A stretch of DNA of 64,000 nucleotides, taken from positions 124,062,001 through 124,126,000 of the forward strand of contig NC_043000.1 of NCBI RefSeq assembly GCF_006345805.1. The letters run 5' to 3'. How positions within the stretch are numbered: the stretch's first letter is position 1; every line of letters starts with the position of its first letter. Source of the stretch: Octopus sinensis (taxonomy: Eukaryota). The translations under genes were made by a program, and so were the position numbers. The notes beneath the pieces were generated by a model, which was not told the DNA's origin, did no database searches, and saw only the letters and a program-made list of their open reading frames with translations. Positions 22,251 to 58,821 of this stretch are shown here, piece by piece.

Positions 22251-22526
22251 TTAAGGGGGTCTTTTTAATCTTGCTAGTTGTATGGCCATCTCACTAGTGC
22301 TGGCACCACAAGAAAAAAGCACCCAATACACTCTGTAAAACGGTTGTCATTAGGATGGGCATCCAGCCATAGAAACCATTTTAAAGCAGATAGTGGAGTT
22401 TGATGCAGTTCTCCAATTCATGGACCCTGTAGAAACTTTCAACCCATGCCAGCATGGAAGGCAGATGTTAAATGATGATGATGATATCCTGAAGTACAAA
22501 TCTAAGTGCTATAATGTATTGAATCA

Positions 22527-22740
22527 TCATCATCTTCATCGTTTAACGTCCGTTTTCCATGCTAGCATAGGTTGAACAGTTCAACTGGGGTCTGGGAAGC
22601 CAGGAGGCTGCACCAGGCTCCAGTCTGACCTGGCAGTGTTTCTACAGCTGGATGCCCTTCCTAACGCCAACCACTCCGTGAGTGTAGTGGGTGCTTTTTA
22701 CATGCCACTGACACAAGAGCCAGTCAAGGCAGCACTGGCA
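22527..22740 (-). mobile_element. RTE LINE 3' UTR fragment
   Basis: Reverse complement of the 3' end of the RTE at 41660-41825, including the (GAT)n tail. Confidence 0.85.
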
Positions 22741-23155: not shown

Positions 23156-23233
23156 ACTACCATGAAAGACATCAGAACTGTCATTGCTGCAAAATATAAC
23201 GATGGTGGTGAACCGCCATTTAATTGCGTTTAG
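23156..23233 (+). CDS. U16-host gene coding exon 4 (TTMKDIRTVIAAKYNDGGEPPFNCV*); exon continues as UTR to a donor after 23276
   Basis: TTTTTAG acceptor with GCTAAC branch-like site; phase 0; TAG at 23231-23233; ATG|GTAAGT donor 43 nt later. Confidence 0.8.
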   Translation, partial: TTMKDIRTVIAAKYNDGGEPPFNCV

Positions 23234-24091
23234 CAAAACATACAGAAGGTTTTAGCCTGCTTGTATACAGAATATGGTAAGTTCTTTTCATCGATACTTT
23301 TTTTGCTACAATATTTCTAATTAAAAACGCACTATGTCTCTTAAAAGTTTATAGTGATTTTGTAAAACAAATATAACAATGTATTACAGTAGTACTTGGA
23401 ATGTAACTTGACAAAAAAAAAGCTAAAACTATAGTGATATATAAAGTCAATATATAATGTAATGTGTTTTTAGCCATTAGTCCCAAATACCCATTATATT
23501 TATGGCAAAAATACCCTAATTTCATTCAGTTTTCCCTTTTCCTTTAAACTCTGGTACTTATTCTATTTGTCTCTTTTGTTGAAATCACTAAATTATAAGA
23601 GCATAAACAAAGCAACACCAGCTGTTGAGCAGTGGTGGAAGTTACACAAAACTCAATGGGGCATGTGCCCAAACATGCAATGTATCAAATAGACTCAAAA
23701 GGCATTGTTTGGCCCAGAGTTATAATAGGAGAAAGACATGCAATGGGACTGAACTTGAAGCCATGTGGTTGCAAAGTGAGTCATACCTGCATTTTCATAG
23801 CAGTTAGTCCTTATTATCATATGGAACTCTTGAATTAGAAACAAAAGGGAATAGTCATTTGCTTTTGAATAAATCCCAAAGAAGATTATAATTGACTTCT
23901 GCAGAAAATATATAGAAACAAAAAGTGGGCAAGTAATATTTCATGCATGTGGCCCTCTCCCACTTGGAAATGGTATAATGTGGCCTCCAGTTGATGAAAA
24001 GTTGCCGATCCCTGCTCTACGTGAAGCTTAATTCTTTTCTCAACAACTGTAAAATGGATGTAAATTATAATTGATACTTTGTGTCATCAAC

Positions 24092-24191
24092 TGACAATGA
24101 TGTTGTAATTTGCGTCTGATGGTGCAGTGCGCAGACTACTGCCTATTGTCAAAATGCCACAGGCTCATTGAAGAACATTGGAACTGAGCAA
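24092..24191 (+). ncRNA. SNORD16: Box C/D snoRNA U16 copy 1 (subfamily A)
   Basis: Box C ATGATG, guide GTAATTTGCG, D' CTGA, C' TTGAAGA, D CTGA, GCAA end; 5' terminal stem degenerate. Confidence 0.85.
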
Positions 24192-24251
24192 GTTATTGGT
24201 ATTGCTGCAAATATTTTTATATAATTCTGCTAATTTTATAGATTTATGTAA

Positions 24252-24764
24252 TCTATATATATAAAACTGTAGTTGTGTGAGTGTCTGTCCCCTTCGATTT
24301 AGATTCCTAACTACTCCCACATTTTGCGGTGCAGTTTAACCAAATTCGGGTATCTTATAGTCGTGATTCATATCGAGCCCGTCTGAGTATTAGCGCGCGT
24401 CTACGATGAGTCTACGATTTTAAAAATGATTTAACATCATTTTTTATTCCATTTTAATGCATAATTTTTCATGTGTCGATGGCGGCGGAGTTGGCGTCCA
24501 TGGTCACACCTGCACCTGTTTGCTTCTCCCCCTTCTTCCCTCCCTCGTGAAGCTGTGGGGAAGGGAGTGTAAAGAAATCAACGTCGTAAAGCGTTGTCAA
24601 GGAGACCAGCGTTCTTTTAGAACAACGACTTCATGGCTTGAAGACACCAAAACAGAAATGGCTAAGAAAGCCCGAATTGGCATCTATAAGGGAAGTAACT
24701 CTATAAAAATGCTTATATAGTTATTTCCCTTACAAACCCGTGCAACACCGGGCGATACTGCTAG
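24252..24764 (+). mobile_element. Complete non-autonomous Helitron (family A)
   Basis: A|TC...hairpin...CTAG|T, inserted between A and T with no TSD. Confidence 0.9.
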
Positions 24765-25029
24765 TACATATATAAAAATAGTTGTTTTAATATCATTTTT
24801 CCATGCTTGCATGGGTCAGATGGAATTTGTTTAGACACATTCTCTATCATAAGAAGACATTTCTGATGACCCCAACATGTTTTCATGCAAGATTTGAAAT
24901 GGACACTGCTTGCACGATGGTGACACTTGCTTACCACTATTGCACAACATCAAGGCAAGGAGATGATAATACATACAGACATTTATTTATACCAAGTCTT
25001 TTCAAGGTTTTGATTGGCTCATGGTTACA

Positions 25030-25355
25030 GTAGTAGACCAGCAGAATTCATCTACGAAGCAATTGCCCCAGCTCCCCTTCAGGGTTGGCGAAAGCGATGT
25101 GGTGGACAACGAAAAACCTGGCTAACGACAGTCAAGGCTGATCTGGAACCCAACCTAGGCCCCTATTTCAACGACAGTCAAGGCTGATCTGGAACCCAAC
25201 CTAGGCCCCTATTTCTATGGCCTTCGCCGCTGGAATAAGGAGTGGTTGGAGATCACGCGGTCGTTAGCCTCAAATTGCCAGGCCTGATCTGCGTTTGTGA
25301 GAGATGCAGCATTGAGGATGAATGAAGCCAGCTCAACCTACCCTGGGTGAATGCT
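25030..25355 (+). mobile_element. 3' fragment of an RTE-like LINE with an internal 46-bp tandem duplication
   Basis: Translates RKTWLTTVKADLEPNLGPLFYGLRRWNKEWLEITRSLASN...SAFVRDAA, resembling RTE ORF C-termini (recalled); AACGACAGTCAAGG...CCCCTATTTC duplicated. Confidence 0.55.
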
Positions 25356-25863
25356 GTCTCAAGACAAGAAGACATTAGTAGACACTTGACCCAAGTGCCA
25401 CAAAGTGGGACTGAACTCAAGACCATGTGGTTGGAAAGCAAACTTATCTCACATCCATGCCTGTTTATTTTTAAAACTAATGAGATGGCTATGATGACTT
25501 TTCACATTTCAGTGCACCTGGCTCAGCTCATTTGTGTTTTCAATGGCTAGTAGTGTGAAAAAATATTACACATTCTAGGACACGAATATTCAATATTCTG
25601 GTGTCACATTATTCAATGTTTATTTGAGAACTTACTCTTCAATACCATATTGATGCCGGTTGGGAATAATTAAAAGACTTTTGATTTTATTTGCTTGGTG
25701 TATGATATGAATACAAGATGTAAGAAAGTATTTTGTTGTAGACGTATTTACCACTAGTAATATTCTAGTAAGGCTAAGTTTGCAACATATTCCTGTCATT
25801 TCAGGAACAAGGATTTTCCCCTCTTTGTTTGGTGATATTATTGTACTATAGTGTTGAGCTAAT

Positions 25864-25967
25864 TTGCAATGATGCTGTAATTTGCGTCTGATGGTGCAGT
25901 GTGCAGACAGTTGCCTGCTGTCAATTAATGTCACTGGCTCTCATTGAAGAAGTTTTAAACTGAGCAA
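25864..25967 (+). ncRNA. SNORD16: snoRNA U16 copy 2
   Basis: TTGC/GCAA terminal stem, C/D'/C'/D boxes, internal GACAGTTGCCTGCTGTCA as in vertebrate U16 (recalled). Confidence 0.92.
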
Positions 25968-26682
25968 GTTAATTGAAGCGAAGAATTCATTAAATTTTGT
26001 TTAAGGATTCTGTAATTTTACGTGCTATTTTGTATGATAATTTAAAACTAAGTAGAAAAAAATTATCTGCAGTGCCTCTTAGGTCTTCTCAGTAAGTTAA
26101 CTGAGAGATTCAGGTTGGAAAGTGTATGATATTGAAGGAGCAAATGTTTTGTCTGCGTTAACGGGGGTGGCTAGATCTACCTCAATGCCATAGCAACCAA
26201 GGTTGATCACTTTAAGAAATGTCGTGGAAAACTAGCTCAGGAAGGCAGAGATGCTACTCCCTGAGACTCCTTTCGGAGCCCCCCCCCCCCCTGCCCTGTA
26301 TAGTAAATACCCCACTGTGTAGTAAATGAGAATTCATGCTATTAAGTTGAGGTACAGGATTGGTGACAAGTGATGTTAAAACTCTTGCATGCTACAAACT
26401 TCTGAGTTTACCTGGTTGACAACTGGTAATGGCATGCAGTTGGTAATTCATCTTGTGGTAATACAACACAAAATATTACCTATACTGGCTTGAACACCCA
26501 ATAGAAATAGCCAGAGAAGTAACTTGTATAAATTATGGTTATATCAATTATCAAATCAATTTCTACCAAATTATTTTTGGAATTTACATATAATAAAGTA
26601 ATTAAGTTGGATATTTGGTGTCTCATTGAATTATTCTTGGATATGGAAAATTCAAAGGTTTTTTTTTTCTTTGAGTGTTAAC

Positions 26683-26785
26683 TTGCAGTGATGCTGTAAT
26701 TTGCGTCTGATGGTGCAGTGTGCAGACAACTGCCTATTGTCAACAATGCCACTGGCTCTCATTGAAGAACATTGGAACTGAGCAA
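26683..26785 (+). ncRNA. SNORD16: snoRNA U16 copy 3 (subfamily A)
   Basis: TTGC/GCAA stem, GTGATG box C, intact guide, D' and D CTGA. Confidence 0.92.
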
Positions 26786-26929
26786 GTTGATTTAACGTTG
26801 AAATATGATATAGCATCCCCTCTATGAAATGTTGTTATAAGATTTCATGGAGGGGATCAGTTATAATTCTGATAGAAATTGCAATTCATGGGGAAAAGGA
26901 TGCAATATATAGGAATCAGGAATTAAGGC

Positions 26930-27157
26930 GTTGAGCTGGCAGACATGTTAGTGTGCCGGGCGAAATGCTCAGCAGTATTTCGTCTATCGTTACGTTCTGA
27001 GTTCAAATTCCGCCAAGGTTGACTTTGCCTTTTATCCTTTCGGGGTCGATAAATAAAGTACCAGTTTCGCATTGGGGTCGATGTAATTGACTTAATCCCT
27101 TTGTCTGTCCTTGTTTGTCCCCCCAGTGTTTAGCCCCTTGTGGGCAATAAGGAAATA
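26930..27157 (+). mobile_element. tRNA-derived SINE (short family)
   Basis: GAGCTGGCAGA...GAGTTCAAATTCC...GGGCAATAAGGAAA. Confidence 0.85.
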
Positions 27158-27586
27158 TATATAGGAATCAGTAAGAAACCTGAGGAAGTCCTTTTACAGC
27201 TACTATTTCATAGATTTGTCATCATCATAACTGTTGCAGTAGAGCATCATCGTTTCGTGAAAGTGTTAATAATGTCTTGAGTAATCTGGTGGCCAAACTG
27301 TACACCCGATTGGTTTTTCAGTGATGACAGTTATTTAATCTGAAGTTAGGTGTTTCTTGTAACTCAATCCAATAACTGCTTGATATTTTGATACAATTTA
27401 CTTAACTAAGGTTTTATGGATGGATATTGTTAACAACAGCAAATGGAGTAACTTTTGTTATCCATAGTGAGATTTTTGCTGATAGCTATGTTGCAATACA
27501 TCATAGAGTCGGAGTTAGTATTGTTACTCTGACAGCTTTGTTTTAATTACATTAATATGATACATGTTGTATGAAGATAATCAAAC

Positions 27587-27691
27587 TTGCAATGATGTGG
27601 TAATTTGCGTCTGATGGTGCAGTGTGCAGACAGTTGCCTGCTGTCAATAAATGCCTCTGGCTCTCATTGAAGAAAAGTTAAAACTGAGCAA
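27587..27691 (+). ncRNA. SNORD16: snoRNA U16 copy 4
   Basis: All boxes, guide and terminal stem intact. Confidence 0.92.
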
Positions 27692-28486
27692 GTTTATTTA
27701 CTCCTACCATCTTGTTGAAAATCTTCCAAATCAAAATCTCAGTCATGTAATGATTGAACTGAAAATAACTAAAAAATAGGTTTGTTTATTTAAATGCCTA
27801 TAGTGTATTTACGATTTTGAAAATTGGAATGCCAACCACTCTGATAGTGTAGTGGGTGCCATTTGCGTGACACTGGTATCTGCCACAACTGCGATTTTGC
27901 TCAGCTTGATGGGTCTTAGTAAAAAATCAATTGCAATTAGTGACATGGACATCATAAGCAAAAAAAAATAGTTTTCCCTTGACCTTTTTGTAGATTTTTA
28001 AAGTAAGATTTACAGGTAGTAAATTAATTTTTTCCTTTCAGAAACAACATAGTCAAGTATGCATAGAAGTTTTGATGAAAAGATAATTTCCAAAATAAAT
28101 TGCAAAAATTCAACAATATTCAGATCAATTTTAATAGTGGACATTACAAAATATGAATAAATGGTAAATGGATTAAAGTTTCTTTCTCCAGATTAGAGTT
28201 CATATCTTCCTTTGAATATAAATATGAGTGGTTCAATTCTGGTGGCATAGGACTGAGTGATAAATGTGCTTGCAGGTGAATTTATGTCACATAGGATGTT
28301 ATGACTTACACTGGTCACCATAATTATGTTCAGCAGAAGTAATGATAATTGTTTAGTTGCAAATGATGGTCTCCATATGGTTTTATTTTTCTCTTACTCT
28401 TTCTCACCAAAAGCAAGTCTGTTTAGTGTAACCATGATAACTGATGAGATACTGATGCCTGTGTTGTGTTTAAACCTGATGCTAAC

Positions 28487-28591
28487 TTGCAGTGATGTGG
28501 TAATTTGCGTCTGACGGTGCATTGTGCAGACAGTTGCCTGCTGTCAATAAATGCCTCTGGCTCTCATTGACGAAAAGTTAAAACTGAGCAA
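28487..28591 (+). ncRNA. SNORD16: snoRNA U16 copy 5
   Basis: All boxes intact; C' is TTGACGA. Confidence 0.92.
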
Positions 28592-29049
28592 GTTCATTTA
28601 CTCTTACTGTCTTGTTGAAAAATCTTCCAAGTCAAAACCTCAGTCCTGTAATGATTGAGCTGAAAATAACTAAAAAAAATAGGTTTGTTTATTTAAATGC
28701 CTATAGTGTATTTACTTCAGGTTAGATTATTTTGAAAACTGGAACGCCAACCACTTTGAGAGTGGGTGCCATTTGCTTGACGCTGGTATCTGCCACAACT
28801 GCGATTTTGCTCAGCTTGATGGGTCTTAGTAATAAAATTAATTGCAATTAGTGACATGGACATCATACAATAAAAAAAGGTTATCTCTTGACCTTTTTGT
28901 AGTTTTTTTTTTAGTAAAATTTTGCAGGTAAATATCCATATGGCTTTATTTTTTTCTTACTCTTTCTCACCAAAAGCAAGTCTGTTTAGTGTAACCATGA
29001 CAACTGATGAGATACTGATGCCTGTGTTGTGTTTAAACGTGATGCTAAC

Positions 29050-29154
29050 TTGCAGTGATGTGGTAATTTGCGTCTGACGGTGCAGTGTGCAGACAGTTGC
29101 CTGCTGTCAATAAATGCCTCTGGCTCTCATTGAAGAAAAGTTAAAACTGAGCAA
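29050..29154 (+). ncRNA. SNORD16: snoRNA U16 copy 6
   Basis: All boxes, guide and terminal stem intact. Confidence 0.92.
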
Positions 29155-29609
29155 GTTCATTTACTCTTACCGTCTTGTTGAAAAATCTTCCAAGTCAAAA
29201 CCTCAGTCCTGTAATGATTGAGCTGAAAATAACTAAAAAATAGGTTTGTTTATTTAAATGCCTATAGTGTATTTACTTGAGGTTAGATTATTTTGAGAGT
29301 GGGTGCCATTTGCGTGACACCGGCACAGGTGCCAATTTGCTTGACACTGGTATCTGCCACAACTACGATTTTACTCAGCTTGATGGGTCTTAGTAATAAA
29401 ATTAATTGCAATTAGTGACATGGACATCAAAATAAAAAAGGGTTATCCCTTGACCTTTTTGTAGTTTTTTTTAAAATTAAAATTTGCAGGTAAATATCCA
29501 TATGGTTTTATTTTTCTCTTACTCTTTCTCACCAAAAGCAAGTCTGTTTATTGTAACCATGACAACTGATTACATTGATGCCTGTGTTGTGTTTAAACTT
29601 GATGCTAAC

Positions 29610-29714
29610 TTGCAATGATGTGGTAATTTGCGTTTGATGGTGCAGTGTGCAGACAGTTGCCTGCTGTCAATAAATGCCACTGGCTCTCATTGAAGAAAAG
29701 TTAAAACTGAGCGA
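29610..29714 (+). ncRNA. SNORD16: snoRNA U16 copy 7 (D' CTGA changed to TTGA)
   Basis: Guide intact, D' altered, 3' stem GCGA. Confidence 0.88.
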
Positions 29715-30991
29715 GTTTATATAAATGCTTCTACTTAAACATGTTATGTGAATTTCAGGGTAACCTTTCAATACCAGTCACCTCATCCCAAATTTAACTG
29801 TTTGAAACTATTTGCATAATCTGATTTAAACTGTCATTGAAACTGAAAAATTGATTTTTTTAAATTTATGTAATATGGAAAGTTTATTCTTGTATTTTAA
29901 TAATTTGGGGTTTAGCCTGATGTACATAATATTGATATACCAAGTTGTAAGAAGTTATTACAAAGGCTTCTGGTTGTAAAACACTATCTCTAAAAGTTGT
30001 TCAACCTATACCAGTATGGAAAGCAAACAAAATTATCATGATACCTTACTGAACTCTGGTTTTATGTGGTGCAAGGGAATAAACAAAGTTGCATGATCTT
30101 TATTTACCATAACAGTAACCAGCAAAAGAAGGATTAAGCTTGAGTGTAGTTAAAGTTTTGCTGTTATTGTAGTTTTTTAATGAAACTAATACCAACTAGT
30201 TATAAATTGTAAAGTACAGCAAAATAAATGTGTAGCATAAAATATGATTAGATAAAACAAGGAATAAAAATTTTTATGGCAAAGAAATTGTCCAGGAAAG
30301 AAGAGATGTAATTTTATCATAATAGTCATCAGCAAAAGTAATTAGGTTTATGTGCTGGCAGAATAATGTATCTTGACTGGGATATTGTAGATGTGGTTAA
30401 AAGTACTGTTACTATTTGTAGTAAAACCTAAATTGTGATTTTAGTATGAAGGCCATCTATTCAGCTTATTAATAAACTAGCCTAAATAGGAGGATTTCAC
30501 AATGTTAAATAATCAGTTGTTTTCCAATGGCTTGTGCTTTTCTGATTTCTTTTTAACATATGTATGGTGACAATTATTTATCCTTGCCTCATACTTTGGT
30601 GTGATTTTATGATTCTGTTGTGTCAACACCCCCAGACGATGAAGTAGGCTAGCCCAACACGTAGATATAGAGGGAGAAGCCTAGACGTTGAGAGTTGAGT
30701 ACAGGTCATCCAAACATGCGATATAACAGTGGCAACGAGGATGAGATACTCACACAGCCACTGTGTAGTATTGCAATATAACAGTGCCAATGAGGATTTC
30801 ATAGCTCAGCCACTGTAGTATTGTGATATAACAGATTCTAAGATTTTATGACTGATTATTCTTGGAATATTGTAATGTTTCAGAGATATGTATCACAATA
30901 CTTAAAACCAGGATTAATATATCATTACTACAATAGCTTACCATTTAATTACATTTATATTTGTCTATGTAGTGCTTGAAGATGATCAAAC

Positions 30992-31096
30992 TTGCAATGA
31001 TGTGGTAATTTGCGTCTGATGGTGCAGTGTGCAGACAGTTGCCTGCTGTCAGTAAATGCTTCTGGCTCTCATTGAAGAAAAGTTAAAACTGAGCGA
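30992..31096 (+). ncRNA. SNORD16: snoRNA U16 copy 8
   Basis: All boxes and guide intact; 3' stem GCGA. Confidence 0.9.
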
Positions 31097-31835: not shown

Positions 31836-32212
31836 AAATTATATTAAATAAAATCATCAGTAATGACCCGAGATAGCAGCTGACACTAGAAATTACATAG
31901 GTTAAAAAAGTGTTGTCCTAAATGTACTTAACCTTAAATGCTAATACACTTTGATAGGTAAATGATTACCTTCTATGTTCAAAACATTTAATATAAACAC
32001 TGCTTTCTTTGAGGCAATTTACAGAAATAGCGTTATAAACATCTTTTGCTATGCTGCTTGGGTTCCATGTTTGTTTTGGCATGGTTTCTACAGCTGGATG
32101 CCCTTTCTAATGCCAACCACTTTACAGTGTACAAGGTACTTTTATGCAGCACTGATACAGGTGCTTTTTATGTGGCACCAATACCCACGTTTTATGTGAA
32201 ATAGATTCTCAA

Positions 32213-38980: not shown

Positions 38981-39432
38981 TCATTATCATCATTTAATGT
39001 CCGCTTTCCGTGCTAGCATGGGTTGGACGATTTGACTGAGGACTGGCAAACCAGATAGCTGTACCAGGCTCCAATCTGATCTGGCAGAGTTTCTACAGCT
39101 GGATGCCCTTCCTAACACCAACCACTCCGAGAGTGTAGTGGGTGCTTTTACGTGCCACCGGCATGAGGGCCAGTCAGGCAGTACTGGCAACAGCCACGTT
39201 CAAATGGTGTTTTTACATGCCAGCTGCTCGTAAGTTTTTTCACATGCAACCAGCACAAGTGCCAGTAAGGCGATGCTGGTAACGATCACGCTTGAATGGT
39301 GCTTTTTACATGCCACCGGCACGGAAGCCAGTTAGCTGCTCTGGCAATGATCACGCTCAGATGGTGCTCTTTGCACCCCGCCAGTCATCAAATTTAATTT
39401 CAATTTCACCTGCCTCAACAGGTCTTCGCAAG
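38981..39432 (-). mobile_element. RTE LINE 3' UTR fragment
   Basis: Reverse complement of the family 3' UTR (GTGGCACGTAAAAAGCAC units, GAT tail). Confidence 0.85.
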
Positions 39433-39527
39433 CAGGGTAATAAATGACACTGCTTGCATCACAGTGATAATCATTTACAACTATAATTCATGTAATGTCA
39501 AAACAAGAAGACAAACACACACACACA

Positions 39528-41825
39528 CTCAGGTTGCTGAATAAAGAAAATGAATGGGATACAGAGAGTCTGCCGAATGTTGACCCAACAGAGGGACCAG
39601 CTATCAGAGTTGATAGTTCCTTGGTAGTTAAGGCAATTAGAAGCATGAAGACAGGGAAAGCCCCAGGCCCATCAGGTATCACTGCAGAGATGCTCAAAAT
39701 ATCTGGTAGTGTCAGCTATAGCCTAGTCACCCGTATAGTTAATCAGGTGATACAAGAAGGAGTCATACCCAATGACTGGTGTAGCAGCATAATAGTCAAC
39801 TGCTACAAAGGTAAAGGTGACGCCCTAGATACAAATAATTACAGAGGTAACAAGCTGATGGATCAGGTGATGAAGGTTACGGAGAGGGTCATAACCCAAC
39901 TAATTAGAGAGAGAGTTAGTTTAGATGAGATGCAGTTTGGGTTCGTGCCAGGGAAAAGTACCACTGATGCTATATTCCTGGTAAGGCAGCTGCAGGAGAA
40001 ATACCTAGCCAAAGATAAGCCCAAGTACCTGGCTTTTGTTGACTTAGAGAAAGCCTTCGACAGGGTCCCCCGATCCCTCATCTGGTGGTCAATGAGGAAA
40101 CTAGGGATAGATGAATGGTTAGTGAGAGCTGTGCGGGCCATGTACAGGGACGCTGCTAGTAGGGTGAGGGTTGGAAATGTGTACAGTGAAGAATTCCGGG
40201 TAGAGGTAGGAGTCCACCAAGGCTCAGTACTCAGCCCCCTCCTATTTATCATAGTCCTCCAGGCAATAACGGAGGAATTCAAGACAGGATGCCCTTGGGA
40301 GCTCCTCTATGCTGATGACCTTGCTCTAATTGCTGAGTCACTATCAGAACTGGAGGAGAAGTTTCAGGTGTGGAAGCAAGGTTTAGAATCGAAGGGCCTT
40401 AGAGTCAAACCAAAGTCGTAATAAGTAGGAAGGTAGACAAATCACAAATGCCTGCTCGATCTGTAGAAAAGGTGTAGGTAGAAACTCTATAAGATGCACC
40501 AAGTGTAAGCTATGGACACATAAGAGGTGCAGCAATGTCAAAGGAAGACTAACTAGGAAGATGGTTTTTGTATGTGGCAGATGCTCAGGAACAATAAACA
40601 CTGAAAATGCTCTGAAACCAACTTCTGTCACTTTCCAGGGAGAAAAACTAGAAATAGTTGATAGCTTCCATTACCTAGGTGACCAAGTCAGCAGCGGGGG
40701 TGGGTGTGCTGAAAGTGTAACTGCTAGAGTAAGAATAGCTTGGGCAAAGTTCAGAGAGCTCTTACCTCTGCTGGTGACAAAAGGCCTCTCACTCAGAGTA
40801 AAAGGCAGACTGTATGACGCGTGTGTACGAATAGCCATGCTACATGGCAGTGAAACATGGGCCGTGACTGCTGAGGATATGCGTAAGCTCGCAAGAAATG
40901 AAGCCAGTATGCTCCGATGGATGTGTAATGTCAGTACTCATACTCGACAGAGTGTAAGTACCTTGAGAGAAAAGCTGGACCTGAGAAGCATCAGATGTGG
41001 TGTGCAAGAGAGACGTTTGCGCCGGTATGGGCATGTGGCGAGAATGGATGAAGATAGTTGTGTGAAAAAGTGCCACACCCTAGCGGTTGAGGGAACCTGT
41101 GGAAGAGGCAGACCCAGGAAAACCTGGGACGAGGTGGTGAAGCACGACCTTCGAACTTTAGGTCTCACTGAGGAAATGGTTAGAGACCGAGACCTCTGGA
41201 AGTATGCTGTGCGCGAGAAGACCCGGCAGGACAAGTGAGACCATAACCCGTGGCCTTCTACACGGGATGTAGCCAGCCCACTTATGCATACCTTCCCTTC
41301 TTGGGACACAAAACTCTATTTGTGAAGACCGGTTGAGGCAAGTTAGAATCAGAATCAGAATCGAAATTGATCAATGGAAATTGCAGTTGAGTTACCAGTG
41401 CCGGTGGCACGTAAGAGAACCATCCGAATGTGGCCGTTGCCAGCGCCGCCCCGACTGGCCCCCGTGCCAGTGGCACATAAAAAGCACCATCTGTTCGTGG
41501 CCGTTGCCAGCGCCGCCCAGACTGGCCTCGTGCCAGTGGCACGTAAAAAGCACCATCCGTTCGTGGCCGTTGCCAGCCTCGCCTGGTCCCCGTGTCGGTG
41601 GCACGTAAAAAGCACCATCCGTCCGTGGCCGTTTGCCAGCCCCGTCTGGCACCCCGTGCGGGTGGCACGTAAAAAGCACCCACTACACTCACGGAGTGGT
41701 TGGCGTTAGGAAGGGCATCCAGCTGTAGAAACACTGCCTGATGCAGCCTTCTGGCTTCACAGACCCCAGTTGAACCGTCCAACCCATGCTAGCATGGAAA
41801 GCGAACACTAAACGATGATGATGAT
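39528..41825 (+). mobile_element. 5'-truncated RTE-clade LINE: RT ORF with a frameshift at about 40410, repetitive 3' UTR, (GAT)n tail
   Basis: ORFs 39495-40421 and 40561-41238 with KAPGPSG, QFGF, FVDLEKAFD, GVHQGSVLSP, YADD, YLG, MLHGSETW, GRPRKTW. Confidence 0.95.
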
Positions 41826-48000: not shown

Positions 48001-48092
48001 GCCCGCATAGCTCAGTCGGTAGAGCATCAGACTTTTAAGACTCTTTCTAAGAAGGAATCTGAGGGTCGTGGGTTCGAGTCCCCCTGTGGGCG
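48001..48092 (+). tRNA. tRNA-Lys-TTT: tRNA-Lys(UUU) with a 19-nt intron (48038-48056)
   Basis: Acceptor GCCCGCA/TGTGGGC, D-arm GCTC/GAGC, anticodon stem TCAGA/TCTGA, anticodon TTT, intron at canonical 37/38, one T-stem mismatch, oligo-T terminator 8 nt downstream. Confidence 0.93.
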
Positions 48093-50079: not shown

Positions 50080-50247
50080 ATGGCTGATTCACGTCGTTGT
50101 TATGCGGCACTCTTGAATGGTTTAGCTAGAAGAAACTATTTTGGTGAAAAAGAATTGAGTAATGAAGTCTTGAAAGAACAAATATATCCCAAACTATCGG
50201 ATGAAGAATTTGAACATCTTGTTACAAAATGTACAGCTCTTATAAAG
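50080..50247 (+). CDS. COMMD1: COMMD1 coding exon 1
   Basis: ALLNGLARRNYFG...LKEQIYP matches the COMMD1 N-terminus; AAG|GTAAAA donor, phase 0; a possible 5' UTR acceptor ends at 49999. Confidence 0.93.
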
Positions 50248-52046
50248 GTAAAAACTACACACAATCTTCAAGACACACCCCTTCAAATCAGCTGATATCC
50301 CTTCAATTATATTACAGTTACAATTTCTAAAAACTTTTATTTATATATTTATTGACATAAAAGTCCTTTGAATGACTTTCTGTTTAATGTGGTAACCTTC
50401 TGCTACCGCATATTATTTTCTTTTTCATCTTTTAGCGTAGGTTAGCGTAGCTACAGTGTTAGATCGTTGTCCAATATAGTTTATTCTTTACTTCATTAAT
50501 AACATGACTTCTAATCTCTCAACTTCGACTGGAAAGTAGACAGTTTGCGAAGTAGCTAGAAAAAACAGCCATCCAAGTAAAAGTACTATCATTCAAAATG
50601 AATGGGTGATTTGAGAATGAGCACTTGTGTCTATAAGCAAGCCAAAACCCGCTAGTAATATACCTATCATCAAGTATCACAGAATTCTTTAACTACGAGA
50701 GGCTATTTTCGTTGATATGAGTACGAGAGAATACATTGTTACTCTACACAACTATCCTTACTGCTTATAATATACAACTGATTTCGTCTGTCGTTACGTT
50801 CTGAGTTCAAATTCCGCCGAGGTCGACTTTGCCTTTCATCCTTTCGGGGTCAATAAATAAAGTACCAGTTTCGCACTGGGGTCGATGCAATCGACTTAAT
50901 CCCTTTGTCTGTCCTTGTTTGTCCCCTCTATGTTTAGCCCCCTGTGGGCAACAAAGAAATATATAATATAGAACTGTATTTTCTGTAATTCGGTACCCTT
51001 GTTTTAACATCGACGGATTCGCTGTTAAATACCATGGTTGAGGCCCTATGTAATCGGCGCTTCGTATGAGTTTGGAATGCTCATTTTGCGTCTTTCAAAG
51101 ATTTTATTTAGAATTTTAATATTATCAAAAAAAACTGAAATATATCCTCTTCAAGTTTCTATTTATTCCTTTTACAAAATTATGTTTGAAATCGTACAAC
51201 TTTTGATCATTTCGCTTTGATTAAAAAAAAAAGTAGTATGTTTGAATCAACATTGGTATGTGTAACAACTAGCAGAACATTCTACATTTTGAAATGTTCT
51301 TATTTCTATTTTGATTTTTAATATAATTTCTGTAATTTGAGAAATTTGATAGAAAACACTGGAAGTATAACTACAGTTCAGTGCCCCTTGACTTTGTTTC
51401 CTCATGACAAATATTGTCTGTATGTTTTCTTTTTTGTTTTTTTAAATGAAATTTTGCAGAGATCGTTTTCAAAAGTGTAGATTGCGATTATTTTGATAAC
51501 ATTAAAAATAGAAGGAGGGGAAGTTTCGGATTATTCTACTCCCTCATTGTTTTCTTATAACTCTCTTTAAAATGCATATTTTTTAAATGGCATTTTGCAG
51601 AAATACATAATGTTGGTGCTTCAAACATACATCTAAAAAAAAAATGGAAAATGTTTAAGTTCCAGAACGAACAAAAAGGAATGATTCAAAACTCCTCCCT
51701 AAAGCGTTTTCCCCTAAATTTTATCATAATCTATACCATTAGTCCTCAACCGCGGTCTGTACGACCCCCTGAGGGTCCACGTAAGATTTTTAAGGTCTAT
51801 ACAAGCAAAATAGTAAGTTGGGGGTCCATGCAAGCAAAATATTTTAAAAGACCATAACAAATTTTGCTTTAGATGTATTAGCGTAAGAAATAGCTTAGTT
51901 TCTTTCTCAAACGTTTTACACAGTTCAAACTATACAAGTGAATATGGGGGGGGGCAGGTACTTTGAAAGAAGTATCTATAAAACTAGTTTTTAAATATTG
52001 AATGGCTACGAGGGTTCAGTAATGTAAAATAGTAATCAAAAAGATC

Positions 52047-52360
52047 CATCATTATCATCATTGTTTAATGTCCGCTTTCCATGCTGGCATGGATTTGATG
52101 GTTTGACTGAGGACTGGCAAGCCAGGAGGCTGCACCAGGCTCCAATCTGATCTGGCAAGGTTTCTATAACTGGATGCCCTTCCTAATGCCAACCACTCCG
52201 AGAATGTAGTGGGTACTTTTTACGTGCCACCATCACGAGGGCTCAAATGATGCATTTTATGTGCCACTGGCACAGGAACCAGTCTGGTGGGACTGGCATC
52301 GACCGCACTCAAATGGTGCCAGTCTGGCAGTACTGGCATTGGCCATGACAATGATTTCAC
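52047..52360 (-). mobile_element. RTE 3' UTR fragment in COMMD1 intron 1
   Basis: Reverse complement of the family tail. Confidence 0.85.
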
Positions 52361-52836
52361 TTCAGTCAACAGATAAAAAAAGAAAATGGCTGAGAACCAG
52401 GGATTTGTATCATAAAAACTTAGTTCTGCAAAATTTCACCAATCTGTAGATATGTTCAAAAGTGTGAGGTAACATTATATTCTAGTCCAAGGGAAGAAAT
52501 AAAAAACAACAGTGAAAGAAGACAGTCCCATGGACAGCCTTCAATATTTTTCATTGGTGGTGCTCCAGCATGGCTAGAGTCTTTGGGCTGAAATGTATAA
52601 AAGAATGAAAAGAGAATAAAATATTTTTACTCATTCTTAGGTACAAAAAATGGAGGTTGCATTATATCTGAGATAGCAGTTTTCTCATAAAATATGGTGA
52701 TTTTTTTTTCATACGTTAATAAAATGTCTTTTTTTTTTCCTAGTTAGGGTTGTTGACGGCATAACTCTCACACTTGTTATATTATGTTAAAAATTTTGAT
52801 TATGTTTTTGATTTCATCCCATTCTTTTATTTATTT

Positions 52837-53030
52837 ATTTGTTTCAGTCATTTGACTGTGGCCATGCTGGAGCACCACCTTAAAGAAATTGACCCCAGAA
52901 CTTATTCTTTGTAAGCCTAGTACTTATTCTCTCGGTCTCTTTTTACCAAACTGCTAAGTTTTATGGGAACCTAAACACACCAGCATTGGTTGTTAAGCAA
53001 TGGAGTGGGGACAAACACAGACACACACAC

Positions 53031-53093
<63 letters not shown>

Positions 53094-53226
53094 CAGACAT
53101 ACACACACATATACATGATAGGCTTCTTTCAGTTTCTGTCTACCAATTCCATTCACAACACTTTGGTCGGCCCCGAACCCGGCTCTATGTGGTTGGGAAG
53201 CAAGCTTCTTAACACATAGCCATACT
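52837..53226 (-). mobile_element. Long-family SINE with expanded (TA)n in COMMD1 intron 1
   Basis: Reverse complement of the 21415 family. Confidence 0.8.
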
Positions 53227-54151
53227 GCAATATTGCACCTACTTAATGTTTTTAAAAGCAATACACTCGAACACATCTTATTATAGATATGATCATCAAT
53301 TGTTTACTGTCCACTTTTTCATGTTTTTATGGGTTGGACAGAGTTTATTGAGGTAGATTTTTACAAATGGAAACCCTTCCGGTTGCCAACTCTCACCTGT
53401 TTCCAAGCAAAGTTTTCCCATGGCCAGACAGGTTTTTCACGGAAGTCTAGAAACAAACAGCTTCATATACAGCCATCATATGATGTCAATACAAGGACAT
53501 ACAGGCACGCATACACATATATACAGACGACAAGCGTCTTCCAGTTTTTTTGTAACTTTCCTTAGAATTCTAATTAATTTGAATCCTATTTTCTGTATAT
53601 AAAATTCTTCAGGCATATTTAGACTATATTATGCTGATGAGGTCAAATGACTGAAATATGTCCGTCTCTTGTCTGCAAAGATCACTGTTCACCTTTCGTG
53701 TAAATTGAGAAATTTAGTCTTAAATACTTGAAATTATCTCCCCTTCTCTCTGAGAGTTGCTACCAATTGCTGTTACTAGGTTTTTCTTTTCTAACTCTAA
53801 CTCAGAGAAATTTCAATAAATTAAAAATTTTACAGACAGCATTCAGTACATCACCCTTTAATCTAAGTATAAAATGTATTATTTCATACATTTCGAAGTA
53901 AATCTTTTAATACTGGAGTAACAATAAATTATAATTTGTTTCCTAGTAGTTCCAGCCATTTTTATGCTGTATGAATATCACAGAACATTGAAATGGAGTT
54001 GAGTCAAAAAGGATCTCTACACAAGTGCTTGCCCTACTAGAAATAACACTCTCATGTTTAAAAAAAAGATATATTGAATAATGTAGTTCTAGATATATAA
54101 AGAGATAGGATGAACATGACTTGGGAGCTATACAAGCAACAACTAAAAAGG

Positions 54152-54625
54152 GACACAGGCATGGCTGTGTGGTAAGAAGCTTGCTTCCCAACCACATGAT
54201 TCCGGGTTCAGTTCCACTGTGAGGCACATTGGGTATCTTCTACTATAGCCCCTGGCCAACCAAACCCTAGCAAGAAGATTTGGTAGATGGAAACTGAAAG
54301 AAACCCATTATATATACATTGCATAAACACAAGCACACAAATGCAAAGGTGAGAAAAAATAGTACTTGAATACCAAAGGTAGAATAATATGCTTTTATTA
54401 AAGCTCCAAAATTTCCTGAAATTTTTGTGCATATATATATATATTATCATCATCATCATCATACATACATAAATGTGTGTATCTTTGTATGTATGTTCCC
54501 ATCCCTGCTTGACAATTGGTGTTGGTTTGTTTATTTCCCCATAACTTTGCAGCTTGGCAAAAAGAGACTGGTAGAATAAGTACCAGACTGCAGTCCAGTG
54601 ACTGAAGCAAGTAAAAGATAAAAGA
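54152..54625 (+). mobile_element. Long-family SINE in COMMD1 intron 1
   Basis: GGCATGGCTGTGTGGTAAGAAGC head; tail GACTGAAGCAAGTAAAAGA. Confidence 0.75.
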
Positions 54626-54784
54626 TTATAACATTGATGTAGGTAATAATGGAATGTAGGGAATGAAGTAGAAAGATGGAAGAGGTACAGAACTAAAATT
54701 CTAATTGTTAACCATTATGTTAACTGCTTTCTCTGATATTGTTTCGTTAAATTTTTTCCATACATTTCTATTCTTTTTCTGAAG

Positions 54785-55093
54785 AGTATGGTTGCCGTTG
54801 ACATGGATTTCAATCAACTGGAAGCTTTCTTGACATCTCAAATTAAAAAGGCTGATAGTGGAATGAATGAAGAACGAGCTAATGCTGTCCGTAAGTTCTG
54901 GAAGAATCAAAGGAACAAAATTCATGACATTCAAGTACAACAAACACAATGGAACAGTTGTTTGAAGCAAATGTCTTGGAGAATTGATTTAAAATCTCAA
55001 GCAAGACACATTGAACAAATTGATAAACCTACAGCCATTGTAGAATTGATGGTTTCAAATAATTCACAGACCACAGATGATGAAAATAAAAAG
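54785..55093 (+). CDS. COMMD1: COMMD1 coding exon 2
   Basis: SMVAVDMDFNQLEAFLTSQ...KFWK...WRIDLKSQARH...PTAIVEL; 309 nt phase 0-0; TTTTTCTGAAG acceptor, AAG|GTAAAT donor. Confidence 0.97.
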
Positions 55094-55234
55094 GTAAATT
55101 GCTATTTAATATATTATTAGAATATGTTGAGTAAACTGCTGTTGGTAATTGAAGTATGAGAATAAATAAGACTAAAGCCTCTGAGTGGATTTGGTAAAAG
55201 GAAACTAAAAGAAGCTCCCATCATACATTCATAT

Positions 55235-55576
55235 GTGATTGTTACCAGCGTCGCCTTACTGGCACTTGTGCCGGTGGTACGTGAAAAACAACATTCGAGT
55301 GAGGGTGTTGCCAGTGCCACTGGATTGGCTCCTGTGCAGGTGACACGTAAAAACACCGTTTGAGTATGGTCGTTGTCAGTACTGCCTGACAGGCCCTTGT
55401 GCCGGTGGCACATAGAAGCACCCACTACACTCTTGGAGTGGTTGGCATTAGGAAGGGCATCCAGCTGTAGAAACTCTGCCTGATCAGATTGGAGCCTGGT
55501 GCAGCCATCTGGCTCACCAGTCAAACCGTCCAACCCATGCCAGCATGGAAAGCGGGTGTTAAACAATGATGATGAT
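55235..55576 (+). mobile_element. RTE 3' UTR fragment nested in a long-family SINE (about 55160-55805)
   Basis: SINE body on both sides of the RTE tail. Confidence 0.8.
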
Positions 55577-55836
55577 ATATGTGTATATGTTTGTGTCAGT
55601 GCTTGTCCCCCACTACCATCACTTGACAACCAATGTTGGTGTGTTTATGTCCCCATAACTTAGCGGTTCGGTAAAAGAGACTGATAGAATAAGTCCTGGG
55701 CTTACAAGGAATAAGTCCTGGGGTTGATTTGTTCAACTAAAACCCCTTAAGGTGGTGCTTCAATATGGCTGTGGTCAAATGACTGATACAAGTAAAAGAA
55801 TAAAAGAAAAGAATGAAAGAATATTTCTGGCATGTA

Positions 55837-56377
55837 TTGGTTTGTCTGGAAAGTTTGTGCCGATTTTTAAAGGAAAGGAAAAGATTAATCAACCAAATAT
55901 GAACCATTTTGTTGCACAATGTGTTTCCATCTTTCCTTTAACTTAAAAATACCCTCTTCCCAGAATTGAGGTGGTTTCGTGGCAAAGAATTCATCAAGGT
56001 ATCTTTTTACGTCATCCAAGGAATTGAAATTTTTACAATTAAGACTATTCTGCAGAGACCTGAATAAGTGGAAATCCGAAGGAGCAATATCTGGTGAATA
56101 TGGTGGGTGGGATAACACATCCCAGCTGAGCTGCAACAATTTTTGTCTGGTTCCCAAAGCATCAAGTGCCAAAAATTAACTTTCTTATCTTCCATTTTAA
56201 AGGGTTACAAAATTAACACAGGTTATAGGAACATAAACCTTCTTCCACGAAAAGATAGCTTAAACTGTGCTCTAAATGGAGGTGTGGTCAAATCCTATTT
56301 TATGGACTCAGCCATGTTCTAAAATAAGTTGAAAGGTAAGCTACTATAAATCAGCACAAACTTTCCGGACAACCCAA
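55837..56377 (-). mobile_element. Internally deleted mariner with TIRs and TA TSD
   Basis: ORF with HPPYSPDIAPSDFHLFRSLQN; TIRs of about 30 bp (TTGGTTTGTCTGGAAAGTTTGTGC / GCACAAACTTTCCGGACAACCCAA) flanked by TA. Confidence 0.9.
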
Positions 56378-57384: not shown

Positions 57385-57792
57385 AAATCAAATTTGATGA
57401 CTGGCTAGTGGAACGCTAAGAGCACCATCCGAGTGTGGTCATTGCCAGAGCGGCTAACTGGCTTCCATGCTGGTGGCACGTAAAAAGCACCATTCGAGCG
57501 TGATCATTACCAGCGTCACCTTACTGGCACATGAAAAAAAATCATGCAGGTGGCACGTAAAAATCACCATTTGAGCATGGCTGTTGCCAGTACCGCCTGA
57601 CTGGCCCTCGTGCCGGTGGCACGTAAAAAACACCCACTACCTTCTCGGAGTGGTTGGCGTTAGGAAGGGCATTCAGCTGTAGAAACTCTGCCAGATCAGA
57701 TTGGAGCCTGGTGCAGCCATCTGGTTTGCTAGTCCTCTGTCAAATTGTCCAACCCATGCTAGCATGGAAAGCGGACATTAAACAATGATGAT
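57385..57792 (+). mobile_element. RTE 3' UTR fragment in COMMD1 intron 2
   Basis: Family repeats and (GAT)n tail. Confidence 0.85.
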
Positions 57793-58719: not shown

Positions 58720-58821
58720 GCTAAAGTATTTCATTTTGAAATGGATGACAAGAAATTAGACCAAGTTCTAAGCAATCTACACGAGATCAAAGAACAGATT
58801 TCCAATCACAGTCAGCAATAA
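58720..58821 (+). CDS. COMMD1: COMMD1 coding exon 3 (AKVFHFEMDDKKLDQVLSNLHEIKEQISNHSQQ*)
   Basis: ATTTTCCAG acceptor, phase 0, COMM-domain final helix, TAA stop; total 192 aa. Confidence 0.92.
   Translation, partial: AKVFHFEMDDKKLDQVLSNLHEIKEQISNHSQQ

What the first reader, a model, noticed from the sequence alone, without database searches (positions are those of the whole stretch)
24092..31096. Eight-copy tandem expansion of snoRNA U16/SNORD16
Seen: eight same-strand elements of about 100-105 nt with a TTGC/GCAA stem, C (RTGATG), D' (CTGA), C' (TTGAAGA/TTGACGA) and D (CTGA) boxes. The guide GTAATTTGCG is invariant and complementary to 18S rRNA CGCAAAUUAC; the D'+5 rule points to the A equivalent to human Am484 (yeast Am436, snR87). 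The snoRNA bodies are conserved while many flanks diverge, which implies selection. Eight copies of one guide in one host is a high dosage for a single rRNA site.
Basis: partly seen in the sequence, partly recalled or inferred. Interest (0 to 1): 0.8.

Follow-up and report, generated by a model that had tools for sequence, protein, structure and literature searches.

The report
Eight U16 snoRNA genes in octopus
A 7-kb stretch of the common octopus genome carries eight same-strand copies (seven look intact, one is decaying) of the ancient U16/SNORD16 guide RNA that directs one methyl mark on 18S ribosomal RNA; the copies are real, but this is an ordinary kind of gene-family expansion.

Summary
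Eight + strand box C/D elements of 99-103 nt lie between 24092 and 31095. All match Rfam SNORD16: six pass the curated cut-off (49-63 bits), c3 scores 44.6 and c1 32.5. The 10-nt guide occurs 8 times against 0.06 expected. It is identical to the vertebrate consensus and in the same register to D', so it points at the 18S A equivalent to human Am484. The window is Octopus vulgaris.

Bodies are 79-98% identical, while most flanks are at random-sequence identity (about 52%). Where flanks still align, bodies have diverged 2-8 times less. The terminal stem and internal hairpin keep pairing through compensatory changes. Copy c1 has a broken terminal stem and is probably decaying. Copies c4-c7 arose by tandem duplication of a unit of about 563 nt.

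No RPL4 (the vertebrate host gene) and no other snoRNA is in the window. The host transcript is inferred, not shown: splice-site scoring did not support one copy per intron.

Multi-copy same-guide snoRNA arrays are well known (Drosophila Uhg1, chicken RPL4). I also found 3-copy and 2-copy U16 arrays in an unidentified eukaryote. Verdict: real, correctly identified, a new member of a known kind, of modest interest.

The parts
24092..24190 (+). U16/SNORD16 copy c1, probably decaying
   Evidence: Rfam RF00138 scores 32.5 bits, below the gathering score of 45. The guide, C, D', C' and D boxes are present. The terminal stem has two mismatches (CTGAC against GCAAG), the hairpin has a U-U mismatch, and the spacer has two 2-nt deletions. 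The generic C/D scan misses it.
25865..25966 (+). U16/SNORD16 copy c2
   Evidence: 50.1 bits. 7-bp terminal stem with one G-U pair. 88-91% identical to the other copies, with flanks at background identity.
26684..26784 (+). U16/SNORD16 copy c3
   Evidence: 44.6 bits, E = 4e-6. The hairpin stem is kept through a double change, GACAA...TTGTC against GACAG...CTGTC.
27588..27690 (+). U16/SNORD16 copy c4
   Evidence: 55.1 bits. It shares about 42 nt of upstream flank with c8 and about 330 nt of downstream flank with c5 and c6.
28488..28590 (+). U16/SNORD16 copy c5
   Evidence: 63.5 bits, the best copy. C' = TGACGA, as in the Rfam consensus.
29051..29153 (+). U16/SNORD16 copy c6
   Evidence: 54.2 bits. 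Against c5, the body differs at 2 of 111 positions and the flanks at 41 of 444.
29611..29713 (+). U16/SNORD16 copy c7
   Evidence: 49.3 bits. D' = TTGA. The 3' stem strand reads GCGA, which keeps a G-U pair.
30993..31095 (+). U16/SNORD16 copy c8
   Evidence: 54.5 bits. 97% identical to c4 in the body; only about 45 nt of flank aligns, at 78%.
28372..29723 (+). Youngest part of the array: tandem repeat of a unit of about 563 nt, each unit carrying one U16 (c5, c6, c7). The older c4 unit (27584-28018) is related.
   Evidence: blastn self-comparison: 28372-29163 against 28935-29723 is 92.6% identical over 798 nt; 27584-28018 against 28484-28930 is 87.7%. The repeat finder families D1, D2, D5-D7.
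28903..28927 (+). Candidate 25-nt micro-exon of a non-coding host transcript (paralogues at 27994-28017 and 29465-29489). Predicted only.
   Evidence: An acceptor scoring 8.2-9.4 bits is followed directly by the donor CAG|GTAAAT at 8.4 bits. Such pairs arise by chance at about 0.2 per kb, so this is unproven.
23156..23276 (+). Candidate non-coding exon upstream of c1. Predicted only.
   Evidence: Acceptor tttttgtaatttttag| and donor ATG|GTAAGT (9.7 bits). Stop codons in all three frames. 815 nt upstream of c1.

Best explanation
This is a lineage-specific array of SNORD16 (U16) box C/D snoRNA genes in Octopus vulgaris.

Function. Each intact copy (c2-c8) is expected to fold so that its 7-bp terminal stem brings the C (RUGAUGY) and D (CUGA) boxes together, and to assemble the standard box C/D particle (Snu13, Nop56, Nop58, fibrillarin). 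It then pairs through the 10-11-nt guide upstream of D' with 18S rRNA 5'-CGCAAAUUAC(C)-3'. The base opposite the fifth guide nucleotide upstream of D', the first A of AAA, is 2'-O-methylated. This is the site equivalent to human 18S Am484. All copies carry the same guide, so they are redundant and add dosage, not new targets.

Origin. The array grew by repeated tandem duplication inside the locus. c1-c3 and c8 are old: their flanks are no longer alignable. c4 to c7 arose later by unequal crossing-over of a unit of 563-900 nt. c1 is now decaying.

Biogenesis (inferred, not shown). The copies have no shared upstream element and all sit on one strand, so they are most likely cut out of one long + strand Pol II precursor that does not encode a protein. 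That precursor could be a U16-only snoRNA host gene, or one or a few long introns. Release would be by splicing and debranching followed by exonuclease trimming, or by endonucleolytic release independent of splicing, as a review describes for some intronic snoRNAs in frog oocytes (to my recollection these include U16).
For: Identity: eight RF00138 hits covering the full model, six of them above the gathering score.

Guide: present 8 times against 0.06 expected. It is identical to the family consensus and in the same register to D'. U16 guiding Am484 was shown by depletion (PMC3035437). The orthology table linking U16, snR87 and snoR15, with an 11-nt 5' antisense element, is in PMC2653536. The 18S sense strand contains CGCAAATTACCC (PMC10047333).

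Structure: with the octopus copies plus eight homologues from metagenome contigs, 88.7% of stem cells pair, against 29-47% when the partner is slid. The covariation score is 0.479 against 0.165 +/- 0.03 in shuffles (0 of 500 reach it). 8 of 12 pairs show double changes.

Constraint: bodies are 79-98% identical. Unrelated flanks are 49-57% identical, against a shuffled baseline of 52.2 +/- 2.0. In the young duplicates:
- c5/c6: body 1.8% divergent, flank 9.2% (p = 0.004).
- c4/c6: 1.8% against 14.2% (p = 6e-5).
- c4/c8: 2.7% against 21.7% (p = 3e-4).

Age: the youngest paralogue flanks differ by about 9%. That is similar to the non-coding divergence between O. vulgaris and O. bimaculoides at the neighbouring locus, where aligned blocks are 86.5-91.4% identical. 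The array is therefore old and is not an assembly artefact.

Tandem origin: mosaic sharing of flanks and a 563-nt period.

No own promoter: upstream flanks of the independent copies are at background identity.

No coding host: tblastn with a recalled RPL4 sequence gives no significant hit. COMMD1 starts at 50080, 19 kb downstream. No other snoRNA family is in the window.
Against: There is no expression, methylation or splicing data.

Splice-site scoring does not support a tidy one-copy-per-intron host:
- The best acceptors 25-110 nt downstream of the copies score -1.6 to 4.3. Random windows average 3.5, and the genuine COMMD1 acceptors score 7.6 and 8.1.
- No donor of 5.5 bits or more lies between c3 and c4, or between c7 and c8.
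- The micro-exon candidates are no rarer than chance.

Within the bodies, variable columns are only weakly depleted in the functional elements: 12 of 57 against 20 of 55, p = 0.056. Gene conversion limited to the bodies could mimic part of the body/flank contrast.

Confidence: 0.8

Rival explanations
1. Only one or two copies are expressed. The others are dead duplicates that look conserved because gene conversion from the live copy keeps overwriting the roughly 110-nt bodies.
For: c1 already shows disabling changes. c4-c8 bodies are 94-98% identical, while c4/c8 flanks are unalignable beyond about 45 nt, a pattern conversion can produce. The within-body test of functional against spacer columns is not significant (p = 0.056-0.105).
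Against: The seven copies c2-c8 keep every box, the guide and both stems. The changes that do occur in stems are compensatory or wobble: c3 hairpin, c7/c8 and c2 terminal stem. c2 and c3 differ from c4-c8 at 9-14% of positions, so they have not been homogenised, yet they remain intact.
Confidence: 0.12
2. Each copy is an independent transcription unit with its own promoter, not a piece of a shared precursor.
For: No convincing host exons or splice sites were found. Independently transcribed snoRNA genes exist in animals: PMC4430873 mentions seven in Drosophila outside the clusters.
Against: The upstream 150 nt of the independent copies (c1, c2, c3, c4/c8, c5-7) share nothing beyond the terminal stem: 49-57% identity against a 52% baseline. 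There is therefore no conserved promoter element at a fixed distance. All eight copies are on the same strand.
Confidence: 0.07
3. The copies are snoRNA-derived retroposons (snoRTs), or passengers of a transposable element, and not locally duplicated genes.
For: The region is full of SINE and other repeat fragments. Only the bodies are similar among c1-c3.
Against: There are no A-tails or target-site duplications next to the bodies (sequence). All copies are on one strand within 7 kb, and none lies elsewhere in the 64 kb. c4-c7 share long flanks in a mosaic pattern that fits unequal crossing-over.
Confidence: 0.03
4. Several copies sit in the same long intron or introns, so that besides snoRNAs the locus yields snoRNA-capped long RNAs (sno-lncRNAs) with functions of their own.
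For: No donor of 5.5 bits or more lies between c3 and c4 or between c7 and c8, and acceptors near the copies are weak. Two snoRNAs in one intron are known to give sno-lncRNAs (review PMC11028025).
Against: This rests purely on missing splice signals, scored with a rough PWM built from vertebrate-like frequencies. There is no RNA evidence. It would add to the guide function, not replace it.
Confidence: 0.15

Closest known systems
Vertebrate SNORD16 (U16), Rfam RF00138, in introns of RPL4
   Same: Full-length covariance-model match. The guide GUAAUUUGCG is identical and in the same register to D', so the predicted target is the same (human 18S Am484). The 17-nt internal hairpin GACAGUUGCCUGCUGUC is identical. 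The C box variant AUGAUGU and the short C'-to-D spacer are shared (PMC3035437; PMC2653536).
   Different: The vertebrate gene is present in one copy (human; my recollection) or two (chicken, RPL4 introns 1 and 3; PMC2653536) and lies beside U18 copies in a ribosomal-protein gene. The octopus has eight copies, no RPL4 and no U18 within 64 kb. Its D' is canonical (CUGA, not CUUA).
Drosophila non-coding U snoRNA host genes (Uhg1 to Uhg7)
   Same: Non-coding loci that carry many snoRNAs, including several isoforms of the same guide. Uhg1 holds 16 snoRNAs, and five rRNA positions are targeted only by them (PMC4430873). 42% of expressed fly C/D snoRNAs sit in Uhg lncRNAs (PMC11014333).
   Different: Fly Uhg genes have mapped exons and hold different snoRNA families side by side. 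Here only one family is present, and the host transcript is not demonstrated.
Intragenic (cis) duplication of snoRNAs, as described for chicken and platypus
   Same: Paralogues arise in neighbouring introns of one gene, with guide and structure kept while the rest drifts (PMC2653536). This is the same pattern of conserved body and diverged flank.
   Different: Typical copy numbers there are 2-5. Here there are eight for one guide.
Mammalian SNORD115/SNORD116 tandem arrays
   Same: A repeated unit containing one C/D snoRNA is amplified head to tail. Birth-and-death and conversion among copies are documented (PMC8789076, PMC12429941).
   Different: Those are orphan guides in an imprinted, eutherian-specific locus with dozens of copies. 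The octopus copies carry a canonical, ancient rRNA guide.
U16 arrays on metagenome contigs L077 (3 copies) and L099 (2 copies), organism unidentified
   Same: Same guide. Same-strand copies lie 0.7-2.1 kb apart. Only the bodies of about 110 nt are alignable (89-91% identity). No RPL4 exons are on the contigs.
   Different: A more divergent U16 (34-37 bits) with a different terminal stem and hairpin sequence. Fewer copies are seen, though the contigs are short.

Membership tests
SNORD16 / U16 (Rfam RF00138) | Covariance-model score at or above the curated gathering score (45 bits), over the full model | tested here: met
   c5 63.5, c4 55.1, c8 54.5, c6 54.2, c2 50.1 and c7 49.3 bits, all covering model positions 1-100. 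c3 scores 44.6, just below the cut-off. c1 scores 32.5 and does not meet it.
SNORD16 / U16 (Rfam RF00138) | Box C (RUGAUGA-like) and box D (CUGA) brought together by a terminal stem, plus internal D' and C' boxes | tested here: met
   Present in all eight copies. The 7-bp stem is intact in c2-c8 and broken in c1. The stem covaries across 16 homologues.
SNORD16 / U16 (Rfam RF00138) | Antisense element upstream of D' complementary to 18S rRNA, placing the Am484-equivalent A opposite the fifth nucleotide upstream of D' | tested here: met
   GTAATTTGCG is invariant. Its reverse complement CGCAAATTAC is in human 18S (primer in PMC10047333). The register to D' is the same as in the consensus. c4-c8 extend the duplex by one G-C pair. 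The octopus 18S sequence itself was not available.
SNORD16 / U16 (Rfam RF00138) | Stable nucleolar RNA of about 100 nt bound by fibrillarin, required for methylation of the target A | not testable with these tools
   No expression or methylation data were accessible.
SNORD16 / U16 (vertebrate genomic context) | Located in an intron of the ribosomal protein gene RPL4, together with U18 | tested here: not met
No SNORD18 hit at E <= 0.1. This is a feature of vertebrate synteny and does not define the RNA family.
Non-coding multi-snoRNA host gene (UHG / GAS5 / Drosophila Uhg type) | snoRNAs lie in introns of a spliced, polyadenylated transcript with short exons and no conserved ORF | tested here: inconclusive
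   No protein-coding exons were recognised around the array. Exon-like pieces exist (23156-23276; 25-nt micro-exons in each 563-nt unit), but they are no better than chance, and donors are missing between c3/c4 and c7/c8.
Retroposed snoRNA copies (snoRTs) | 3' A-rich tail, target-site duplications, dispersed insertion sites | tested here: not met
   No A-tails or duplications flank the bodies. The copies are clustered on one strand, and c4-c7 share long flanks.
Tandem snoRNA arrays of the SNORD115/116 type | Head-to-tail amplification of a unit containing one snoRNA, with an orphan guide | tested here: not met
   Unit amplification is seen for c4-c7, but the guide is a canonical rRNA guide and not an orphan.

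The most novel reading that the evidence does not exclude
Octopuses (perhaps cephalopods generally) moved U16 out of a protein-coding host into a dedicated, U16-only non-coding locus. The exon-plus-intron unit of that locus is still being amplified. Because several copies share long introns, the locus would also make U16-capped sno-lncRNAs, or would tune methylation of one 18S site by copy number. That would be a route to ribosome heterogeneity in a lineage already known for unusual RNA biology.
Probability: 0.08. Interest if true: 0.55.

Novelty: new member of a known kind. Interest (0 to 1): 0.27.

Why it matters
The finding gives a clean, annotated example of how a very old rRNA-modification guide changes host and copy number between animal lineages. 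Vertebrates have one or two copies in RPL4. The octopus has eight copies in what looks like a non-coding locus.

The duplication mechanism is still visible: a 563-nt unit, mosaic flanks, and one copy decaying. This is useful for ncRNA annotation of cephalopod genomes and for studies of snoRNA birth and death.

It does not challenge current understanding. Redundant same-guide copies in one locus are well documented in flies, birds and mammals, and the giant squid genome averages about five loci per recognised snoRNA family (174 loci for 34 families; PMC6962438).

Tried and rejected
1. RPL4 as host. tblastn with a recalled human RPL4 sequence gave only chance hits (best E = 0.12, on the opposite strand).

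2. COMMD1 as host. Its three coding exons are at 50080-50247, 54776-55105 and 58717-58818, 19 kb downstream of c8. An intron-containing tRNA gene lies between them and the array. A far-upstream 5' UTR exon cannot be excluded.

3. One snoRNA per intron. My by-eye 3' splice sites 45-53 nt downstream of six copies (c1 and c4-c8) did not score above random windows, and some inter-copy intervals lack donors. The micro-exon idea is no better than chance.

4. Orthologous array in O. bimaculoides. The COMMD1 locus (L121, CM046604.1:16946508-16972455) with 10 kb of flank reaches back only to the equivalent of window position 43-47 kb, and contains no guide match. The array should lie further upstream, out of reach of the tools.

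5. Fishing for other cephalopod copies through a spurious ORF overlapping c2. No hits.

6. Per-family snoRNA counts in the giant-squid paper's supplements. Not present.

7. Myc E-box near a putative promoter. CACGTG occurs at chance frequency, with none between 16.3 and 46.2 kb.

8. Other snoRNAs in the same locus. None found by Rfam at E <= 0.1. My C/D scan gave two extra hits. One, on the minus strand at 27893-27963, is not conserved in the paralogous units. The other, at 39349-39470, I did not examine further and regard as chance.

9. Pfam scan of three-frame translations. The tool refuses sequences with stop codons. Inspecting the stop-to-stop segments by eye showed only low-complexity or TE-like text.

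Full report
**Observation.** An Rfam scan of the whole window at gathering thresholds returns six SNORD16 (RF00138) hits on the + strand and one tRNA. A permissive scan of 20-36 kb adds the two remaining elements (c3 at 44.6 bits, c1 at 32.5 bits; the gathering score is 45) and no other snoRNA family. A permissive scan of all 64 kb also shows no other snoRNA. The guide 10-mer GTAATTTGCG occurs 8 times, only in these elements, against 0.06 expected. A family-blind C/D-box scan of both strands finds 7 of the 8 copies and two unconvincing extras.

**Organism and neighbourhood.** The ORF at 63345-63683 (-) is 100% identical to an Octopus vulgaris SAYSvFN-domain protein on a 177-Mb chromosome. COMMD1 lies on the + strand with exons at 50080-50247, 54776-55105 and 58717-58818. 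The rest of the window is mostly transposon debris: reverse transcriptase, an IS1595-like transposase, a helicase-like ORF that I take to be Helitron-derived, and SINE fragments. RPL4, which hosts U16 in chicken (PMC2653536) and, to my recollection, in vertebrates generally, is not in the window.

**Anatomy of the copies.** The layout is:
- 5' stem strand AACTTGC
- one unpaired A
- C box RTGATGY
- guide (G/T)GTAATTTGCGT
- D' CTGA
- 14-nt spacer
- hairpin GACAG-TTGCCTG-CTGTC
- 22-nt spacer
- C' TGAAGA
- 10 nt
- D CTGA
- 3' stem strand GCAAGTT

The cmscan alignment puts the octopus CUGA on the consensus CUUA, so the fifth base upstream of D' is the U that pairs with the first A of 18S CGCAAAUUAC. 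Human U16 depletion lowers Am484 (PMC3035437). The chicken catalogue equates U16 with yeast snR87 and plant snoR15, with an 11-nt 5' antisense element (PMC2653536). A published human 18S primer reads CGCAAATTACCCACTCCCG (PMC10047333). In c4-c8 the extra G before the 10-mer lengthens the duplex to 11 Watson-Crick pairs.

**Structure.** I aligned the eight copies with eight homologues recovered from metagenome contigs. The terminal stem and hairpin are paired in 88.7% of cells, against 29-47% when the 3' partner is slid by 1-3 columns. 8 of 12 pairs show changes on both sides, and the covariation score is 0.479 against 0.165 +/- 0.03 in shuffles (RNAalifold agrees for the terminal stem). Within the octopus:
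- c3 keeps the hairpin by a G-C to A-U double change.
- c2, c7 and c8 keep the terminal stem through G-U pairs.
- c1 has two mismatches in the terminal stem and one in the hairpin, and is the only copy my scan rejects.

I read this as seven intact genes and one decaying.

**Constraint.** Pairwise global identity of the 107-111-nt bodies is 79-98%. For copies that do not share a recent duplication, the 150 nt on either side are 49-57% identical, indistinguishable from shuffled sequence (52.2 +/- 2.0). Where flanks still align, bodies are less diverged:

| Pair | Body divergence | Flank divergence | p |
|---|---|---|---|
| c5/c6 | 1.8% | 9.2% | 0.004 |
| c4/c5 | 3.6% | 9.1% | 0.04 |
| c4/c6 | 1.8% | 14.2% | 6e-5 |
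| c4/c8 | 2.7% | 21.7% | 3e-4 |
| c6/c7 | 4.5% | 7.8% | not significant |

. Within bodies, variable columns are only weakly depleted in boxes, guide and stems (12 of 57 against 20 of 55, p = 0.056). The case for selection therefore rests on the body/flank contrast and the compensatory changes. Gene conversion may contribute.

**History.** Self-comparison shows a mosaic:
- c4 shares about 42 nt of upstream flank with c8 and about 330 nt of downstream flank with c5 and c6.
- c5, c6 and c7 share about 115 nt of upstream flank.
- 28372-29163 repeats at 28935-29723 (92.6% identical, period 563 nt).

This is what unequal crossing-over between neighbouring units would produce. The flank divergence of about 9% between the youngest units equals the non-coding divergence between O. 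vulgaris and O. bimaculoides at the adjacent COMMD1 locus, where most blocks are 86.5-91.4% identical. Even the youngest duplications are therefore old, and the array is not an assembly artefact.

**Biogenesis is the weak point.** By eye, six copies have a YAG 45-53 nt downstream, which suggested one snoRNA per intron. I scored sites with rough consensus matrices, calibrated on the genuine COMMD1 sites (donors 5.8 and 7.4 bits; acceptors 7.6 and 8.1 bits).
- The candidate acceptors score -1.6 to 4.3, no better than random windows.
- No donor of 5.5 bits or more lies between c3 and c4 or between c7 and c8.
- Each 563-nt unit has a strong acceptor followed after 24-25 nt by CAG|GTAAAT, a possible micro-exon. 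An exon-like piece with stops in all frames lies at 23156-23276. Such pairs occur by chance at about 0.2 per kb.

What can be said is this. The independent copies share no conserved upstream element. All are on one strand. No coding host is visible. A shared long non-coding precursor is therefore the most economical reading. Whether the copies sit in separate introns or share introns is open. A review notes that some intronic snoRNAs are released independently of splicing in frog oocytes, and that two snoRNAs in one intron can give sno-lncRNAs (PMC11028025).

**Comparison with other organisms.** A pattern scan of metagenome contigs (TGATGNNGTAATTTGCG) gave mostly chance hits in prokaryote-like contigs. 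It also gave genuine U16 genes: L041 (67 bits), L031 (53), L116 (50.5) and L102 (44). A more divergent U16 occurs three times on one 11.7-kb contig (L077), twice on L099, and on L089, a 4.5-kb near-identical fragment of the L077 locus. In L077 only the bodies of about 110 nt align (89-91%), exactly as for octopus c1-c3. None of these contigs carries RPL4 exons. U16 arrays outside RPL4 therefore occur in at least one other eukaryote.

**Literature context.**
- Intragenic tandem duplication is described as the main source of snoRNA paralogues in chicken, with similar cases in other vertebrates (PMC2653536).
- Drosophila Uhg1 holds 16 snoRNAs, and five rRNA positions are targeted only by them (PMC4430873).
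- Seven Uhg lncRNAs host 42% of expressed fly C/D snoRNAs (PMC11014333).
- The giant squid genome has 174 loci for 34 snoRNA families (PMC6962438).

**Verdict.** The feature is a new, well-preserved member of a known kind: a lineage-specific tandem expansion of a canonical rRNA-guide snoRNA. Eight copies for one site is at the high end but not different in kind. The host transcript, per-copy expression and methylation remain to be shown.

Noticed in passing
window 48001-48092 (+): tRNA-Lys(UUU)-like gene (Rfam tRNA, 58.3 bits). It has an insert of about 20 nt directly 3' of the anticodon loop (gactctttctaagaagga) and a T10 terminator 10 nt downstream. ARAGORN cannot assign it. The surrounding block is 89% conserved in O. 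bimaculoides (L121 7079-8342). As far as I recall, an intron-containing Lys-UUU tRNA gene would be unusual for an animal.
   Followed up: partly
window 27633-27649 and the same position in c2, c5-c8; L031, L041: The 17-nt internal hairpin GACAGTTGCCTGCTGTC of U16 is identical in the octopus, in two unidentified eukaryotes from metagenome contigs and in the Rfam consensus. It is as conserved as the guide itself, and c3 keeps the stem by a double change. This suggests a function beyond a spacer, which I do not know.
   Followed up: partly
L077 3591-3693, 5679-5781, 7025-7127 (-); L099 about 239-356 and 950-1052: An unidentified eukaryote in host-associated or marine metagenomes carries 3 (and a relative carries 2) same-strand U16-like genes 0.7-2.1 kb apart. 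Only the bodies are alignable, and no RPL4 exons are present.
   Followed up: partly
window 27994-28017, 28903-28927, 29465-29489 (+): Each tandem unit of about 563 nt contains a strong acceptor followed after 24-25 nt by CAG|GTAAAT (CAG|GTAGTA in the oldest unit). This is a possible T/A-rich micro-exon of a host transcript, but it is statistically no better than chance.
   Followed up: yes
window 23156-23276 (+): Exon-like segment: polypyrimidine tract and AG acceptor, ATG|GTAAGT donor, stop codons in all frames, 815 nt upstream of c1. A candidate upstream exon of a non-coding host gene.
   Followed up: partly
window 27893-27963 (-): A 55-nt piece with ATGATGT ... CTGA and a 6-bp terminal stem, on the opposite strand inside the repeat unit. 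The stem is absent in the paralogous units at 28771-28875 and 29335-29439, so it is probably chance.
   Followed up: yes
window 25124-25215 (+): A perfect 46-nt tandem duplication (2 copies, 100% identical) inside a transposon-like segment between c1 and c2.
   Followed up: no
window 22631-22710, 27828-27875, 32077-32121, 41282-41782, 55117-55629 and others: A high-copy repeat (core ...CAGCTGGATGCCCTTCCTAACGCCAACCACTC...) is scattered on both strands, with a fragment inside the U16 tandem unit. It gives spurious long ORFs and sub-threshold miRNA-model hits (for example 22448-22566).
   Followed up: no
window 50080-58818 (+) and 63348-63716 (-): COMMD1 (three coding exons) and a SAYSvFN-domain gene (SAYSD1), in the same order and orientation as in O. 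bimaculoides (L121).
   Followed up: yes
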